A DNA stretch of 64,000 bases from Diadema antillarum (GCF_040938485.1 NW_027271040.1:992001-1056000), one strand, 5' to 3'; shown: positions 7,791 to 45,040, counted from the first letter of the stretch. Notes: generated by a model not told the origin, from the letters alone. Numbers and translations: made by a program.

Positions 7791-8640
7791 CTCTTAATAG
7801 CACTATAGGTATCACTTTGTATGCAGTGTTCTACAGCCAAGGCATCTATGTGTTAAAATCCATGGGCTGTCCTCGACAAATTCTCCTCCCTTTTTTATGC
7901 CCATGAAAATTTTATGGGGTCTCGGTGTTAAAGTGGCCTTGCCCCAGAAAAAATGGTATTGGTAATAATGTGAATAGATGAAGATCATCAAGCGTCAAGA
8001 GCTAGTCTTACTTTCAGCCTGCTGGCTGATTCTGTGCCTTCTACATCATCAGTTTAGAGACATGTAGAAGGGCCACAATAGGGTAGTGCAATTATCCATA
8101 TACTCTTGATCAAAGATTGTGACCATGCCCAAGTCCTACACATTAAAAAAAAAAATACATATATATATATGATGCTTCAGAAGTAACATACTGTTTTAAT
8201 GTCTCTGAACATATACTCAGTATCATTTGGATGCAGCAAATACAACAGTATATCATGCGAAACACTCAGTGAAAGTTTGAGGACAAGCGCTTGAAGATTT
8301 TTGAACTTTTGAAAGTTTTAGACAATTCCATGTGCCACCTTTTCTAGATGGGAGCTCTAAAACAATATTTGTGCTGTCACTGTACAATAATGATCACGCT
8401 GTTAGAATAAAAATATCAAAATCTCTGCAGATGTATGTTGGACAATGAACAAGCTTTGCAATCTTTCTTCTCCAGAAGTCATGGAGAATAATGTTTGCCT
8501 TATTAGGTTTCAGAAGAAAACATCAAGAAAATGTGTAATTTGCATGAAATTTGAAAATGTTTAGACTTTTCTAAAATGTTTTTACATTCTTCTCTTTTGA
8601 GTATTAATTATCTTTCTATATCTATCTAGAGTCAAAAGGG

Positions 8641-8679
8641 GCCTGAGCTTTCGATCCTAGCAGAATCTTCATCAGAGGC
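8641..8679 (-). ncRNA. Minimal type I hammerhead ribozyme motif of Penelope-like-element type
   Basis: Minus strand reads GCCU-CUGAUGA-A-GAUUCU-GCU-AGGAUC-GAA-AGCU-C^AGGC. It has an intact core, 4-bp helix I, 6-bp helix II and palindromic helix III (AGCU). Confidence 0.75.
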
Positions 8680-8998
8680 AAAATGACAAGCAAGATGGGA
8701 AAGCAATCTATCTATCTATCTACTCTATTTTTTTTGGGGGGGGGGGGTGGAGAGGGGAACTCCTCTTTAAAGTATGAAACAAACAAAGCAATCTACTAGA
8801 AAATGCAGCTAGCTTATCTTGATTCTTCAGGGGGTCAGCACTGTTTTTATGTTGTGGTCATCATTTCTCAAACATTACACTTTGGTGATTTATTGGGTCA
8901 ATGCTCGAGGGTGGAGCTTTTTTAGGGTGATGTTAAAACAATCATTGACTTCCTGGGCATTGCCTCCACAGAGAGGCAGGCTGGAGAGCAGTTATAGT

Positions 8999-39335: not shown

Positions 39336-41138
39336 TATGCAAATGTTTGATATGCGAACGCCACATATTTTGCACAAACTCTTTTGTTACTGGTGCGCAA
39401 TAACATGTTCACAGCTTTTTTCAAACTTATTGCCCACTATTCTTTTTTTTTCAGCTGTGAATGATAAATGAAATATTTCTGAAAAATTCTAATGACATCC
39501 AAATATGCAGCAAGACATGAACGCCCAGTGTTGATATACCCTGTAATTGTTTTATTATTACAATGTGCACTGCACTTGTATGAACAGCTGGCAGCAACAC
39601 TTTGGCTCGTTTGAAGTACATGTAGTTTGTATTTCCATTACATATGTACATCACAGACATAAATAGTCTTACCTACATTTAACCAATATACATTTAACCA
39701 GTCATATGGCTACCAATATACAGTATTTCTATTCGTATCAGAGCATGGACTGCAACATTGTGAGCTGCAATCTATTCAAGACAATACAAAACTTACATGA
39801 CCCCGCAGAAGCTTTAATCTTTCACTTATTCAAAAGGAACCATGGCAATGTTTCAAGTTTGACAGTCATTAGCCAGTACATTTTAAAAAGTGCCAACCTT
39901 ATTCCACACTCTGCTTGTTTAACCCATATGCTATATCATGCTTCACACAGTCGTAACAAAATTGTGCACGTCACATTATGTACTATCAATGACGACGAGA
40001 TGAAGACATAGTGCGAAAAAGTTCTACTTCTTCTTTTTCCTGTACTGTGCAGGACCTCCTGAGAGTATACATGTACTCACGACTAAAAATGAATGCAGCT
40101 ACAACAAATACATTAAAAATGTACAATGTAGTTGCAACCAGACAGCTGTATAAATGTCGACAACATAATTCAATGGTGCATAAAACAGTTGCTCTATGAT
40201 TCACAAATTGCTCCTCTGACCTCTCGGCAAATACCACGATTACAATCTAGCGATAATGTTATAGTGATTACATACCATCATACGAATGTTTTACCATAAA
40301 GGGATGACCTGTAAAAGCAATGAATTGTATTTAGGCCTACAGTATCTGTACCAGATAACAGACCTTATCAAAGAAAGACCTAACACAAATGTAGAATACA
40401 AGCTTGACGGTTGGGATTTCTGAGTAGCAGCATGGCAACAACAAACACATAATCCAACTTGTGCAGAAGCCAAATCTCCCATAGGTCAATGCACTCTCTC
40501 CAGCCCGGATGTGTACTACTGCAAAATAGAGCGTTCCTGTAATGTATTACAATTCATGGCTTTTTCTTTTCATACGCCTGAATAAAAAAACCATTTCATT
40601 CACCTGCTCATTCCAATGCAAGTTTCTAATGCAGGAATGCACTTAGTTGTTTCTAGTGAAAGCAAGCCTTTGGCAAGCTGTGTGGTTGTTTAGAACAACT
40701 TTTGTAAAATTTGAATACAAAGTACAAAACAGTGTATTGAGCCTATTTGGCAGTATGTTAGAGCAATAATGAAATAATGTACCCTGTGCAGTTTGTGAGA
40801 AGTGTAAGGGTTTGTGTACTTTGGGCAAAGTGAGGAAGTTTTAGGGACATAATACAAGAATGGTACATGGCCCATCACAGTATTAATGAATAAAATGATA
40901 CACTGTGTACTGGTAAATTGTTGTACTGTAAAAAAAAAAAAAGGAAAATAAAGTTTAGGGTCAGAGAATCCCTCAGAAATAATATTACACATTATTGCAT
41001 TTGAATGAGACAAGAGTCGAGGGGGTGCAAGAATGTAGCACTGAGTTGTTTCACACGTTAATGACAGATGAACTACAGCAATATGTCACAACGGGCATGG
41101 CTGACACATAATGTGCAAAAGACAATGTACATTGTACA

Positions 41139-41292
41139 CAGTAGCAGATCCAGAGGGGGTGCACCGTGTGCGTGCCACCTCTTTATTTTTTGTGAAAACA
41201 AAAGAAATTGAAAAAAAAAATGGGGGTGCATGCGCCCCCCTTTAATTTTGTAAAGACGCCTCCCCTTTACGGAATTCCTGGATCCGCCCCTG
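41139..41292 (-). mobile_element. Short GC-rich MITE family H, copy 1
   Basis: CAGTAGCAGATCCAG...CTGGATCCGCCCCTG. Inverted relative to 42716-42879; no intact TSD. Confidence 0.65.
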
Positions 41293-41623
41293 GTGCATGT
41301 ATAACATAAAGCATATCAAATCTTGCTCTGGCAGTGAAACTTTCTTGGGCAACATTAGAACCATTCCACATTATTTGTACGCGAGCATTTAGAGAGATGT
41401 ATTAAATAATGGTATATATACCTGTACCACATTTCTTACAAGCACAAATCTTTTGGTGCACAAATCAGCCAAAATATGTAAGTGCCATAACCTAATGTCT
41501 AGCAAAAAATATGGGGCCACAAAAATAAAGAATAGTACATACCGTATGTGATATGAGAAAAAAAAATAGAACGGGTGTACAATCTCATAATATCCTAATG
41601 GCATAGGCAAGCATAAGATATTG

Positions 41624-41851
41624 GTAAAGAGTTCCCTAAACACATCCAAAAGTTGTATTTACCAGTGACAGTTTCGACGACAGGCTGTCGTCTTTTTCAA
41701 ACGATGGCTAATTGGCAACTGATGATATGGCCATCGTTTGAGAAAGATGACAGCCCGTCGTCGAAACTGTCACAGGTAAATACAACTTTTGGATGTGTTT
41801 AGAGAACTCTTCACTTGTATTTATCAACCATCCTTATGAACTTATTTTGCA
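41624..41851. mobile_element. Penelope-like inverted-repeat insertion with two hammerhead-like cores and a 15-bp TSD
   Basis: 82-bp inverted arms at 41627-41708 and 41730-41811. TSD AAGCATAAGATATTG at 41609-41623 and 41852-41866. Each arm reads UUGA(G/A)AA-A-[helix II]-GAAACUGUC. Confidence 0.7.
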
Positions 41852-42715
41852 AAGCATAAGATATTGTTCACATCAAAACTCACTAAAGCAGCACTACCGA
41901 TGACTGTATGTGTGATTGGATCAATTTTACATTGCCACAAAGGAAGCACTAAAGCGACCATGGACAAGCTGCTATGGGACAGATGTCTGTATGTCACAAA
42001 AGATTAAGCAATGGGGGCAGATAGAGTTCCTTATTCATGAACACCATTGCTGCCAGAGGGCTCGAACTAATGACCTTGTGATTTAAAATCCTTGGTCTTA
42101 TACTCTCACACACTGATCGAGCCACAACAGACTGAATATCAAAATTATACAAGTTCAATTCTTACTAGTCAATCAAGTTTGTCTGCAGGTGATTGACTCT
42201 GTACACCTTGGTGAATGAGGAAAACAGGGAAAGTAACCCTGGATGCAGACTGAAAGTTTCATAATCTACAACTGATATGTCATTTTACCATTTATGGGTA
42301 TACTTTCATACATTTTCATATCATTCATATATTTACATATAAATATCAAAAATACCCTGAAAATCCACCACTAGGAAAGTATTGAGCTAAAAAAGAAGAG
42401 ACTACCCTGAAAAATTGGAAACCATCAGGTAATAGACTTCCACCATCCAAACTGGAAGCAAATACCTGAAACATAAGCTATATTCAAAATGAAGTTATAC
42501 AGTTACCATGCACATTTAAAAAAAATCATTATTATCATTATTATCTTTTGTACACAGCCTGCTGTGTATTCTTCACTCCGTTTAACACTACAGTCTGTTC
42601 AAAGAGAATGCATTTGCCTTGGTTATACATTGTAGTCATGTCCCTTTCTGTAGTGTTGTCCTTTAATAGCAAAGAACCATCCCTAGCACACTCATAGCAA
42701 AGGCATATATGAAGG

Positions 42716-42879
42716 CAGGGGGGGATCCAGGAATTCTGTAAAGGGGGGGCGTGACTAATATTTCTGGTGCCACTTCCGGGTTTCATTTCATTGTTTTTCT
42801 TTTTATTTCTTTTGTTTTTTACGAAAATAAAGGGGGGGGGGGCGTGCGCCGGCTGCGCCCCCCTCTGGATCCGCCACTG
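42716..42879 (+). mobile_element. Short GC-rich MITE family H, copy 2, 6-bp TSD
   Basis: TGAAGG|CAGGGGGGGATCCAG...CTGGATCCGCCACTG|TGAAGG. Confidence 0.75.
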
Positions 42880-43568
42880 TGAAGGTACAGAGAAACAGCT
42901 GAAATTTGCAAATTGATTGAGAATGGATGATCATTCTTTTGCCCAATAGTGCATAAAATTAATCTCCTGTACAATGGTGTTTTTGGTACTTTAATGATAA
43001 GTGTACCATACTTAGAAAATGCCTGGCAGCTGCACAGACCAGGATTATGATGTAGCAGAGGCATTTTCACATAAATAATTACACTATGCCCCATGTCATG
43101 ACTACAAACAAGTTTGGTGGAAGATGCCAAGCACACCTGCAGTGATCCTTTAACAAGAAATTGCAATTTCTTTTGCATGTAATCAACATGTATGTTGTGC
43201 ATGGGACCGCCATCCAATGTTAAGTCCCTTTCATGTTCAAATCGACCACTTGACAGAGTCAATATCAAAGTTGAAAATTGTGGAATTCCAGTTAGTCACT
43301 ATGCATATAAAATTACTGCACAAATCTGTCATTGATCTATACTTGTGATATCCATTACTTCATTCCTGTTTCCATTTCTTTCGCAACAGTGACTATTCCT
43401 TGAAACTCCTATCATTTAGATCAAAGAAACACTTGCAAATTGAAAATTCAACCACCTTCAATATTTCTATGAAGGATGTTCGTGGACCTTCCCGTATTGT
43501 TGCTTTCACTTTATCAACCAGACTAAATTTGAACATGGAGTGGAGTTCCCCTTTCAGGGTGTGGCATA

Positions 43569-43824
43569 TCACTCTTTTTCCTGAACAGGAGCAGACGTGG
43601 CACCTTCTCCTTTCCCGGAACCAGTCCCACCTCCAGCAGAGTCCCCTCCTGTCTTCTTCACCACCCACACCTCGTTCGTTCTGTTGAACAACTTAAAGGG
43701 GCTGTCGTAGCCAGCGAAGTAGAAGATGTCATCGCGAAGCTGGTGTCCGTCTCGCTCCAGGACGGGAATAAACTTTTTCATCTCCTCAAGATAATTTTCT
43801 TCACTGGCGTTGCCACCAAACGTT
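43569..43824 (-). CDS. SOUL/HEBP2-like heme-binding protein (cytosolic type), last exon
   Basis: cctgcaaag|A ACG (AAG acceptor). TFGG...YFAGYDSPFKLFNRTNEVW is the SOUL C-terminal motif, followed by a Gly-rich tail. Confidence 0.92.
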
Positions 43825-45040
43825 CTTTGCAGGATGAAATAAGAAATGCATATGTTTAAGCTGGAGCACAGCTTTAATACAGTGAAACCTTGTTGCATAA
43901 TGAAGTCAGCTATCACAACAAACTCTTACAACCAGGAGCTTTTGCAGGTCCCTCCTAATACTTCTTCTTTTCTGTGACGTGATTGAGAGCTAAAACCTAA
44001 AAAGAGAAGTTACTGACCAGTCTGTATACACCAAATATTTTGTGACTTATTATCTTACACAAATTTTGTAAGTCAGGTGCTATTTGCAAATTAAAAAACA
44101 CACAAAAAAAACATGAATTCTGATCCCAGTATGAATGCGGCATACAAGCATACATTTCTCCATTCAGTCCTGTGCAAATTAAACCACTTGCATAAAGTCC
44201 AGAGTCGCAAAAATTAGACTTGCTAAAATATATACACATGTAGCATATTTCGTATTTGTCATGGTTTTTAGGTCCTTGTTTCAAAAAGGTTCTACTATAT
44301 AATGTAGTCTCCATCTGGCAAATTACAGCAACATCATTCTCATGTTTCCCATAGGGAAAAAATACTGCCTCTTCCATAAAACATAAAAAAAAAAAGAGTA
44401 TTCACATAATCAAGCAGCTCAGGACCAGTGGCTATTGATCAACATCTATACTTATACAGCTCCATTGGAATAAGTATTGTTTGCTGATGGATGCTGCTAT
44501 CAGTACTGCAAAGTCTTCTTTCTCTACTGACGAAAATAAGAAATGAGTGCAGTCCATATTCCATGCTTCAATACAGTGGTAGCTGTGCAAAAACAACATT
44601 CTGTTAGTCACTTCTTTGTACCAACAAATGGGTTAGAGGGCTATATTCACTATAAAAAGAGAATCTTTTAAGATGGGAACTAACCATAATATCAAAGTAT
44701 CTAAAAGTTTTTCCTCTTTTCTCTCCTCTATTTCTCGTTTTGACTACACCTATTTCACAGTACAGTGCTCTTCTGTTTATAATGAAATTCTTTTACAAAG
44801 AAACAAAGAAGTAAGGTATCAGATCCCCAACTTATCACCTATATACACTCGTATCTCCAGTACATTTTACTGTTCAGCTATTATATAACGAAATTTTGAT
44901 ATATCAAAAGACTAGAAACGTCGCTATGGCAACTGGTATGCCTCCGCCATAATGTATGATTCTCCTAATAGGTCTACAGTACATTTATATGACTTTGGGA
45001 AGAGCCGATCCCTACAGATGAGACGGCTCCCGAGACTCAC

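What the first reader, a model, noticed from the sequence alone, without database searches (positions are those of the whole stretch)
41609..41866. 228-bp self-complementary retro-insertion carrying two outward-facing U3-A8 variant hammerhead cores
Seen: a 15-bp TSD (AAGCATAAGATATTG), 82-bp inverted arms and a 21-nt spacer. The plus arm reads UUGAGAA-A-GAUGAC-AGCCC-GUCGUC-GAA-ACUGU-C^ (41738-41771). The minus arm reads UUGAAAA-A-GACGACA-GCC-UGUCGUC-GAA-ACUGU-C^ (41700-41667). Known: C3-G8 is a Watson-Crick pair that can covary to U3-A8, GUC is the canonical cleavage triplet, near-palindromic helix III is typical of dimer-acting Penelope hammerheads, and Penelope insertions often have inverted pLTR copies. 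Helix I is weak (2 bp plus bulged pairs). The insert lies ~1.7 kb past the stop of the minus-strand SOUL gene, so it may put a long dsRNA hairpin or a conditional self-cleaver into a 3' UTR. It is a different family from the 8641 ribozyme.
Basis: partly seen in the sequence, partly recalled or inferred. Interest (0 to 1): 0.8.

Follow-up and report, generated by a model that had tools for sequence, protein, structure and literature searches.

The report
Inverted Penelope retrotransposon fragment with hammerhead motifs
This is an ordinary dead fragment of a Penelope-like retrotransposon, two truncated tail ends joined head-to-head, each carrying the small hammerhead-ribozyme motif (in its published U3-A8 form) that such elements normally carry.

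Summary
There is a 15-bp direct repeat (41609-41623 / 41852-41866), 85-nt inverted arms (93% complementary), a 21-nt spacer and an unpaired 37-nt tail. The motif coordinates are exact.

Longer genomic copies of the same repeat carry a reverse transcriptase + GIY-YIG endonuclease ORF, so this is a Penelope-like element (PLE). Other insertions have a constant 3' end and variable 10-14-bp target duplications, and some are 5'-truncated. The motif lies in sense about 37 nt after the ORF stop. The family consensus itself reads UUGAGAA, so U3-A8 is not a decay product.

Other PLE families in this genome carry the same architecture just after the ORF stop, some with CUGANGA and some with UUGANAA. Helix II covaries strongly across families.

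All of this is published:
- Cervera & De la Peña 2014 described PLE minimal hammerheads, the U3-A8 covariant and opposite-strand pairs.
- Craig et al. 2021 and Frangieh et al. 2024 described the inverted truncated copies and the one-sided 30-40-bp tail.

Cleavage activity is untested. Helix I is weak (2 bp, then 3 more past an internal loop). A read-through transcript would fold into a -140 kcal/mol hairpin instead. Whether the SOUL 3' UTR reaches the insert is unknown. Other first-reader notes of this scan, and one follow-up, describe similar inverted PLE/hammerhead pairs on other DNA of this genome.

Low interest: a new member of a known kind.

The parts
41609..41623 (.). Left copy of the target-site duplication (AAGCATAAGATATTG)
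   Evidence: Exact 15-nt direct repeat. Seven other insertions of the family have different TSDs of about 10-14 bp.
41624..41730 (-). Inverted, 5'-truncated copy of the PLE 3' end (about 107 nt; sense strand is the minus strand). It lacks the terminal tail.
   Evidence: 94.4% identical (6 mismatches in 108) to the family 3'-end consensus. In other loci the inverted copy starts within a few nt of the same internal point and also lacks the tail.
41667..41700 (-). Minimal hammerhead motif, U3-A8 type: UUGAAAA A GACGAC AGCCU GUCGUC GAA ACUGU C. The predicted cleavage site is 3' of the C encoded at 41667.
   Evidence: Read. The conserved core positions match the family consensus, and the changes are at N7, one helix II pair (U-G to C-G) and loop 2. 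An HHR-compatible fold of the single arm costs only 0.8 kcal/mol above its MFE.
41729..41851 (+). Direct, 5'-truncated copy of the PLE 3' end (about 122 nt; sense strand is the plus strand), including the tail. It is joined head-to-head to the inverted copy at GGCC (41729-41732).
   Evidence: 97.5% identical (3 mismatches in 122) to the family consensus. Many genomic copies match this 122-nt segment at 93-97%.
41738..41771 (+). Minimal hammerhead motif, U3-A8 type: UUGAGAA A GAUGAC AGCCC GUCGUC GAA ACUGU C. The predicted cleavage site is after 41771.
   Evidence: Identical to the family consensus 34-mer, which has 44 exact genomic copies. It has the same architecture as the motifs of other PLE families.
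41815..41851 (+). PLE 'tail': a 37-nt 3' extension present at one end only (...TATTTATCAACCATCCTTATGAACTTATTTTGCA)
   Evidence: It has no partner in the left arm. It is conserved at the right end of the other tailed insertions examined and absent from every inverted left copy. It matches the published 30-40-bp one-sided tail.
41852..41866 (.). Right copy of the target-site duplication

Best explanation
The 228-bp insert is a dead, non-autonomous remnant of one integration event of an endonuclease-bearing Penelope-like retrotransposon (here called family X; about 186 motif-bearing copies in this 1.75-Gb genome).

Inferred mechanism: the PLE GIY-YIG endonuclease made a staggered cut of about 14-15 bp. 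Both DNA ends then primed reverse transcription on PLE RNA. One cDNA started at the extreme 3' end, giving the right copy with its 37-nt tail. The other started at the internal start site about 35-37 nt upstream, giving the left inverted copy without a tail. Both cDNAs were short (122 and about 107 nt) and were joined head-to-head at a few bases of microhomology.

Because the PLE minimal hammerhead lies in sense in the 3' UTR, about 37 nt after the ORF stop and about 80 nt (cleavage site) before the 3' end, each truncated copy carries one. They therefore face outward on opposite strands. The motif is the family's normal one. It is a type-I 'min-HHR' with the U3-A8 covariant of the C3-G8 core pair, an unpaired A between A9 and G10.1, a 6-bp helix II closed by G10.1-C11.1, a near-palindromic A-CUG-U helix III suited to dimer formation, and a short helix I.

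At this locus the motifs are passengers with no demonstrated function. A transcript crossing the whole insert would form an approximately 90-bp hairpin rather than hammerheads.

Shown here: the anatomy, the family membership, the linked RT/EN ORF, the consensus status of U3-A8, and the cross-family architecture and covariation. Inferred: the two-primer integration route. Not shown: any cleavage.
For: Anatomy.

Family and copy structure: 102 matches; arm layout per locus; longer elements up to about 1.6 kb with 190-270-bp inverted ends.

Retro-insertion signature:
- TSDs of about 10-14 bp that differ in each of 7 other insertions.
- An invariant 3' end ...CTTATTTYGCAA.
- 5'-truncated copies (L017, L025, L028).

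PLE identity:
- L023 carries a 433-aa ORF with RVT_1 and GIY-YIG matches (both just below the Pfam cut-offs).
- It is 40% identical (E = 1e-97) to an intact 843-aa ORF with RVT_1 (39.4 bits, above the cut-off) and a weak GIY-YIG match (19.6 bits, cut-off 22.6) in tandem 2.53-kb units.
- The ORF stop at L023:1472 is followed by the motif in sense.

The family consensus is UUGAGAA...GAAACUGUC.

The same architecture sits just after the ORF stop in other PLE families, with C3-G8 (CUGAAGA, CUGAUGA) or U3-A8 (UUGAGAA) cores.

Genome-wide pattern counts are 3441 against 1457 in the control for the U3-A8 type, and 4915 against 1235 for the C3-G8 type, with many close -/+ pairs.

Across 19 representatives, helix II forms standard pairs in about 90% of cells (91.7% for the seven scored pairs together), there are 47 double-sided changes, and 0 of 500 shuffles reach the observed value.

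A C3-G8 family has the same GAAACUGU helix III.

Literature:
- min-HHRs in pLTRs, the extra nt between positions 9 and 10.1, G10.1-C11.1, the U3-A8 covariant (about 1300 hits in Schistosoma), opposite-strand pairs 100-700 bp apart, and a 2-bp helix I in D. virilis (PMC4209133).
- An inverted 5'-truncated copy and a 30-40-bp tail at one end (PMC8557442).
- Two RT start sites that define the tail, and a PLE protein that cleaves and extends both strands (PMC11167929).
Against: No Rfam hammerhead model matches, even at E <= 10. The same search also misses the canonical minimal hammerhead at window 8637-8683, so this negative carries little weight.

Helix I in the consensus is only 2 contiguous bp (GU/AC), plus GCC/GGU beyond an internal loop. 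That is at the low end of the 2-5 bp seen in most of the other families examined here (a few representatives score 0-1).

Within family X there is almost no variation, so covariation comes only from comparison between families. I picked those representatives from pattern hits, so the C3-G8/U3-A8 column is circular and helix II is partly so.

No long copy of family X with a full ORF was found. The best is 433 aa and 5'-truncated, so the family may be extinct.

The two-primer integration route is inferred from structure and from in vitro work on a lizard PLE, not shown for this element.
Confidence: 0.88

Rival explanations
1. The insert is a foldback or MITE-type DNA transposon, with terminal inverted repeats and a cut-and-paste mechanism. 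The hammerhead-like strings would then be incidental.
For: It has long inverted arms flanked by a direct repeat. Longer copies have 190-270-bp inverted ends.
Against: TSD length varies from about 10 to 15 bp between insertions, unlike the fixed TSD of DNA transposon superfamilies (established knowledge). The ends are asymmetric, with a 37-nt tail on one side only. Some copies have one arm only and random 5' truncation points. The internal sequence encodes RT + GIY-YIG, not a transposase. The inverted ends are simply two copies of the ORF 3' end plus the 3' UTR.
Confidence: 0.02
2. The PLE fragment is real, but the U3-A8 'hammerhead' of family X is a degenerate, catalytically dead descendant of a PLE hammerhead. 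The weak helix I, the odd-length helix III loop and the core change would make it a motif relic, not a ribozyme.
For: Helix I has 2 contiguous bp in the consensus. No full-length family X copy was found. Published min-HHRs cleave poorly in vitro even with canonical cores, and HHR mutants did not affect PLE insertion in vitro.
Against: Within family X the UUGAGAA...GAAACUGUC 34-mer is the consensus and 44 copies are exact. An apparently intact, tandemly arranged PLE family (843-aa ORFs) uses the same UUGAGAA core with a different, fully compensated helix II. Several further U3-A8 families exist. Canonical-core families here also have a 2-bp helix I (L085, L092) or the same ACUGU helix III (L082). 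D. virilis Penelope has a 2-bp helix I.
Confidence: 0.35
3. The insert has been co-opted. As part of the SOUL 3' UTR, or as an independent transcript, its approximately 90-bp hairpin would feed small-RNA or RNA-editing pathways, or act as a conditional self-cleaver regulating SOUL.
For: The RNA hairpin is very stable (-139.7 kcal/mol, z = -23.5). It lies 1.7 kb downstream of the SOUL stop on the gene's transcribed side. Rfam gives weak miRNA-precursor-like hits that only reflect the hairpin shape.
Against: There is no expression data. Three poly(A) hexamers lie 574-902 nt after the stop, before the insert. The arms have diverged about 7% from each other, as expected for neutral decay. Many similar close inverted pairs occur genome-wide, so the structure is explained by the insertion mechanism alone. 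The miRNA hits are far below the gathering scores (28.7 against 56).
Confidence: 0.05

Closest known systems
Minimal hammerhead ribozymes (min-HHRs) of metazoan Penelope-like elements, including the U3-A8 core covariant of Schistosoma Cercyon PLEs (Cervera & De la Peña 2014, PMC4209133)
   Same: It is a type-I motif in the PLE terminal repeat or 3' region. It has the catalytic boxes with U3-A8 in place of C3-G8, an unpaired nucleotide between A9 and G10.1, a G10.1-C11.1 pair, a long (6-bp) helix II, a minimal self-complementary helix III that implies dimer action, and a short helix I. Pairs on opposite strands about 100-700 bp apart, and thousands of mostly solitary copies per genome, are also shared.
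   Different: The host lineage differs: earlier notes of this scan call this genome an echinoderm, which I did not verify. Helix III has a 3-nt CUG loop with a central U-U in the dimer, rather than an even-length palindrome. Helix I has only 2 contiguous bp, as in the D. virilis variant, against the usual 4-5. No cleavage data exist for this family.
Complex PLE insertions with an inverted 5'-truncated copy and a one-sided 30-40-bp tail (Craig et al. 2021, PMC8557442; Frangieh et al. 2024, PMC11167929)
   Same: An inverted 5'-truncated copy abuts a direct copy, forming inverted repeats. A 35-37-nt tail is present at one end only. Copies are 5'-truncated. The element encodes a GIY-YIG EN + RT. 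The tail boundary coincides with a second, internal start point for the inverted copy.
   Different: Here both copies are extremely short (about 107 and 122 nt), so no ORF or pLTR-ORF-pLTR unit remains. In the seven independent insertions examined, the tail-less copy was always the inverted one. I did not find that regularity stated in the passages read.
L1 twin-priming 5' inversions
   Same: Both DNA ends at the target prime reverse transcription, giving an inverted 5' segment within one TSD-flanked insertion.
   Different: In twin priming (from my own knowledge, not checked against a paper here) the inverted segment comes from RNA upstream of the direct segment. Here the two segments cover the same 3'-terminal sequence, and the inverted one starts at a fixed internal site. 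The enzyme is a GIY-YIG PLE, not an APE-type LINE, and there is no poly(A) tail.

Membership tests
Endonuclease-positive Penelope-like element (PLE) insertion | A single ORF with a reverse transcriptase followed by a C-terminal GIY-YIG endonuclease in longer copies of the same repeat | tested here: met
   L023:125-1426(-) encodes 433 aa with RVT_1 (18.2 bits) and GIY-YIG (21.9 bits), both just under the Pfam cut-offs. It is 40% identical (E = 1e-97) across the RT C-terminal half and the EN to an intact 843-aa ORF with RVT_1 at 39.4 bits (above the cut-off) and GIY-YIG at 19.6 bits (cut-off 22.6). The arms are the ORF 3' end plus the 3' UTR.
Endonuclease-positive Penelope-like element (PLE) insertion | Retro-insertion signature: a constant 3' end, variable 5' truncation and TSDs of variable length | tested here: met
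   the 3' end ...CTTATTTYGCAA is present in all tailed copies. TSDs are about 10-14 bp in 7 other insertions and 14-15 bp here. L017, L025 and L028 are truncated.
Endonuclease-positive Penelope-like element (PLE) insertion | An adjacent inverted 5'-truncated copy forming inverted repeats | tested here: met
   The same layout is seen in L015, L018, L019, L021-L023, L030 and in this window. It is described in PMC8557442.
Endonuclease-positive Penelope-like element (PLE) insertion | A 30-40-bp tail extension at one end only | tested here: met
   A 37-nt tail lies at 41815-41851 with no partner on the left. The same tail is at the right end only in the other loci. Literature.
PLE minimal hammerhead ribozyme (min-HHR) | Catalytic boxes C3U4G5A6N7G8A9 (or the U3-A8 covariant), G12A13A14, A15.1...U16.1 and H17, in type-I order | tested here: met
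   UUGAGAA / GAA / A-CUG-U / C on the plus arm and UUGAAAA / GAA / A-CUG-U / C on the minus arm. This is the consensus of the family.
PLE minimal hammerhead ribozyme (min-HHR) | An unpaired nucleotide between A9 and G10.1, and a conserved G10.1-C11.1 pair | tested here: met
   An A lies at 41745, and G41746 pairs with C41762. G-C is invariant in 19 of 19 representatives, and the extra nucleotide is A in 18 of 19.
PLE minimal hammerhead ribozyme (min-HHR) | A long helix II (6-8 bp) supported by compensatory changes | tested here: met
   GAUGAC/GUCGUC gives 6 bp. The left arm has U-G changed to C-G. Across families, helix II forms standard pairs in about 90% of cells (91.7% for all seven scored pairs), with 47 double-sided changes and 0 of 500 shuffles as high. 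Slid controls pair at 20-48%. Caveat: I chose the representatives from pattern hits.
PLE minimal hammerhead ribozyme (min-HHR) | Helix I of about 4-5 bp (2 bp in the D. virilis variant) | tested here: inconclusive
   The consensus has U2.1-A1.1 and G2.2-C1.2, then an internal loop, then GCC/GGU. Most other families here have 2-5 contiguous bp (a few representatives score 0-1). The window's left arm gains one extra pair (A to U at 41664), giving 2 + 4 bp.
PLE minimal hammerhead ribozyme (min-HHR) | A minimal helix III with self-complementary 15.2-16.2 / loop 3, allowing a dimeric active form | tested here: inconclusive
   Two ACUGU strands can pair as A-U, C-G, U·U, G-C, U-A, which is near-palindromic with a central mismatch. 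The same ACUGU occurs in a C3-G8 family (L082), and AGUCU occurs in the closest PLE family (L034). No dimer energy or activity was measured.
PLE minimal hammerhead ribozyme (min-HHR) | Location in the PLE terminal repeat or 3' region, in sense | tested here: met
   It lies about 37 nt after the ORF stop in sense in L023. In family B the ORF stop is the UGA inside the core.
PLE minimal hammerhead ribozyme (min-HHR) | Site-specific self-cleavage 3' of H17 | not testable with these tools
   This needs in vitro transcription of dimeric constructs or mapping of RNA ends in vivo.
Rfam hammerhead families (Hammerhead_1, _3, _II, HH9, HH10) | A covariance-model match | tested here: not met
   There was no hit at E <= 10. 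The canonical min-HHR at window 8637-8683 also gives no hit, so these models do not cover min-HHRs.

The most novel reading that the evidence does not exclude
Two readings are not excluded.

(a) In this genome a large share of PLE lineages, including one with apparently intact tandem copies whose ORF stop codon is the UGA of the ribozyme core, have switched to the U3-A8 core. That would make it a natural system for testing how the C3-G8 tertiary pair tolerates replacement. Family X combines this core with an odd-length helix III and a 2-bp helix I.

(b) In the seven insertions examined, the inverted copy always starts at the internal RT start site and the direct copy at the terminal one. If general, this would assign each of the two in vitro RT start sites of PLEs to one of the two cleaved DNA strands.

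For this particular locus, co-option of the hairpin within a long SOUL 3' UTR is also not excluded.
Probability: 0.12. Interest if true: 0.4.

Novelty: new member of a known kind. Interest (0 to 1): 0.15.

Why it matters
It matters little for this locus, which is a decayed retrotransposon scrap near a SOUL gene.

For the scan, the result is mainly practical. Short inverted repeats with TSDs and outward-facing (C/U)UGAN(G/A)A...GAAA strings in this genome are PLE tail-end pairs. There are thousands of such motifs, and they should not be scored as new ribozymes or retrozymes.

Rfam models do not detect these minimal hammerheads, so a blank from Rfam is not evidence against them.

There is also a modest biological point. 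The genomic copies agree with the recently reported two RT start sites and the one-sided tail of PLEs, and they show the U3-A8 core in several families in this genome.

Tried and rejected
Rfam searches:
- Rfam at gathering threshold on the whole window gave no hits.
- Rfam at E <= 10 on the locus and on five family loci gave only weak miRNA-like hits that reflect the hairpin, and no hammerhead.
- I calibrated this on the canonical motif at 8637-8683. It is also missed, so I discarded the negative as uninformative.

Alternative motif readings:
- The spacer contains a canonical CUGAUGA string (41716-41722). Several family copies read CUGGUGA there, and it has no proper helix II, so I rejected it.
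- I considered an intramolecular helix III (CUG-UCA-CAG). It needs a bulge before U16.1 and leaves no helix I, so I rejected it.

Covariation within family X: the family is too uniform. Variants are single decay changes such as G12 to A or U16.1 to C. I used comparison between families instead.

Older, diverged copies (L061, L062, L066; 78-87% identical in the ORF) keep the 34-mer exactly. Because these loci hold mixed copies, I did not take this as evidence of selection.

Other checks:
- No empty-site allele was found. The only other copy of the flanks (C152, 1.09 Mb away) carries the same insertion.
- MITE/foldback reading: rejected (see rival explanations).
- The 2026 preprint on animal retrozymes has nothing on echinoderms or core covariation.

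Not done: taxon verification by protein search (cost not justified), structure prediction, and complex prediction, none of which bear on the claim.

Full report
**Observation**

One search finds an exact 15-nt direct repeat (41609-41623 and 41852-41866). It also finds a single inverted repeat with 85-nt arms (41624-41708 and 41730-41814, 93% complementary) separated by 21 nt. The right arm is followed by 37 nt (41815-41851) that have no counterpart on the left.

Reading base by base, the two motif strings lie exactly at 41738-41771 (+) and 41700-41667 (-). As RNA, the insert folds into one long hairpin of -139.7 kcal/mol, against -46.9 +/- 4.0 for shuffles (z = -23.5).

**What the repeat is**

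The window is part of a 1.75-Gb genome. The 228-bp insert has more than 100 matches there. The commonest form is the right arm plus tail (about 122 nt, 93-97% identical). It is often accompanied, 0.2-1.5 kb to its left, by an inverted copy that stops short of the tail.

Seven other insertions show the following:
- an invariant right end ...CTTATTTYGCAA;
- target duplications of about 10-14 bp, different at each site;
- in some copies, truncation at arbitrary upstream points.

This is the signature of target-primed reverse transcription, not of a cut-and-paste element.

The longest copy (L023:9-1623) contains a 433-aa ORF with reverse-transcriptase and GIY-YIG matches. The ORF is 40% identical (E = 1e-97) to an intact 843-aa RT + GIY-YIG ORF of another family in the same genome. 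The repeat is therefore a Penelope-like element (PLE).

The sense strand is the one that ends in the tail. The ORF stops at L023:1472, and the 3' UTR (1473-1623) contains the motif in sense, about 37 nt after the stop.

The window's insert thus consists of two 5'-truncated PLE tail ends joined head-to-head at GGCC. The inverted copy is about 107 nt with no tail and is 94.4% identical to the consensus. The direct copy is 122 nt with the tail and is 97.5% identical.

**Is the hammerhead reading real?**

Rfam finds no hammerhead, even at E <= 10. The same search also misses the canonical minimal hammerhead at window 8637-8683 (GCCU CUGAUGA A GAUUC..GGAUC GAAA GC UC^AGGC). The negative therefore says nothing.

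The comparative evidence is positive.

(i) UUGAGAA-A-GAUGAC-AGCCC-GUCGUC-GAA-ACUGU-C is the family consensus. It occurs 186 times within 3 mismatches (44 exact) and never in the reversed control. U3-A8 is therefore not a decay product of this copy.

(ii) Other PLE families in this genome carry a motif of the same architecture just after the ORF stop:
- The closest family (about 50% aa identity) has CUGAAGA A GCCUGC..GCAGGC GAA A GUC U U^AUCAAG.
- Another has CUGAUGA A GCCUAC..GUAGGC GAAAGCUC^AC, which also has only 2 bp of helix I.
- A family with intact ORFs in tandem 2.53-kb units has UUGAGAA A GUCCUC AGGA GAGGAC GAAAGCUU^GCC. This is the same U3-A8 core with a different, fully paired helix II.

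(iii) Genome-wide, a loose pattern for the U3-A8 type gives 3441 matches against 1457 for its reversed control. The C3-G8 type gives 4915 against 1235. The listed matches fall into many families with distinct, internally complementary helix II sequences, and many occur as close -/+ pairs.

(iv) I aligned 19 representatives. Helix II forms standard pairs in about 90% of cells (91.7% for the seven scored pairs taken together), with 47 double-sided changes. None of 500 shuffles reaches this, and slid controls pair at 20-48%. G10.1-C11.1 is invariant. Caveat: I chose the representatives from pattern hits, so the C3-G8/U3-A8 column is true by construction and helix II is partly pre-selected.

(v) The ACUGU helix III also occurs in a canonical-core family (L082). 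Contiguous helix I length in most of the families examined is 2-5 bp (a few representatives score 0-1), so family X, at 2 bp plus 3 bp beyond an internal loop, is at the low end but not alone.

For a single arm, a hammerhead-compatible fold lies 0.8 kcal/mol (left arm) or 8.3 kcal/mol (right arm) above the MFE.

**Comparison with what is known**

Cervera & De la Peña 2014 (PMC4209133) described exactly this class:
- minimal type-I hammerheads in PLE terminal repeats;
- a long helix II and a short helix I (2 bp in D. virilis);
- a self-complementary minimal helix III that implies dimers;
- thousands of mostly solitary copies per genome;
- pairs on opposite strands 100-700 bp apart;
- explicitly, a U3-A8 covariation of the core in Cercyon PLEs, with about 1300 hits in Schistosoma.

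Craig et al. [quoted passage not shown]

Frangieh et al. 2024 (PMC11167929) show that a PLE protein cleaves and extends both DNA strands. They also show that reverse transcription starts at two adjacent sites whose spacing defines the tail, and that hammerhead mutants do not affect insertion in vitro.

Every element of the finding is therefore a member of a known kind. Other first-reader notes of this scan, and one follow-up (s1-229788), describe similar inverted PLE/hammerhead pairs on other DNA of this genome.

**Mechanism, with status**

| Status | Point |
|---|---|
| Shown | Anatomy; PLE membership; motif position and consensus; cross-family conservation of architecture |
| Inferred | One integration event in which both nicked strands primed cDNA synthesis, one from the RNA 3' end (tailed copy) and one from the internal start site (tail-less inverted copy), followed by joining at microhomology |
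| Not shown | Any cleavage |

Published min-HHRs cleave weakly in vitro and only as dimers. At this locus a read-through RNA would form the hairpin rather than two hammerheads.

**Gene context**

The last SOUL exon is at 43569-43916 on the minus strand, so the insert lies 1703 nt beyond the stop. Poly(A) hexamers occur 574, 762 and 902 nt after the stop. This makes a UTR reaching the insert possible but not favoured. No expression data were available.

A 96-99% identical paralogous segment lies 1.09 Mb away on the same contig and carries the same insertion and TSD. The assembly contains no empty site.

**Verdict**

It is, however, an ordinary PLE remnant of an already described type. The scan's earlier notes call the genome an echinoderm; I did not verify the taxon.

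Noticed in passing
L050:187-2718 (G000:C390:4170-8342); also L051-L053, L058: A PLE family forms tandem units of 2528 bp. Its 843-aa RT + GIY-YIG ORF is open across almost the whole unit. Its stop codon is the UGA (U4-G5-A6) inside the U3-A8 hammerhead core UUGAGAA. Several copies have intact 844-856-aa frames, so the family looks recently active.
   Followed up: partly
window 40600-42650 versus G000:C152:2125404-2129268: A 96-99% identical second copy of this region lies 1.09 Mb downstream on the same contig. It includes the same PLE insert and TSD, and it has about 1.8 kb of extra sequence at the equivalent of window position ~41214. This is either a segmental duplication or an assembly duplication. 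Many other family loci also come in near-identical pairs on different contigs (for example L015/L016 and L019/L020), which suggests uncollapsed haplotypes.
   Followed up: partly
window 42716-42880: A repeat of about 165 bp has at least 38 copies at 92-98% identity across the genome. It is SINE-like and was not characterised.
   Followed up: no
window 8637-8683 (minus strand): This is a canonical C3-G8 minimal PLE hammerhead (GCCU CUGAUGA A GAUUC UGCUA GGAUC GAAA GC UC^AGGC). It belongs to a family with many genomic copies. No Rfam 15 model detects it, even at E <= 10.
   Followed up: partly
L023:1621-3122 (G000:C344): Immediately downstream of the long family X copy is a tandem array with a period of roughly 340-410 bp and 82-94% identity between units.
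   Followed up: no
G000:C268:257650-282713 and C663:324896-362099: Copies of the family X motif with G5 changed to C (UUCAGAA, a core-inactivating change) recur at intervals of about 8-20 kb on the same strand. The PLE fragment there seems to be embedded in a larger tandemly duplicated unit.
   Followed up: no
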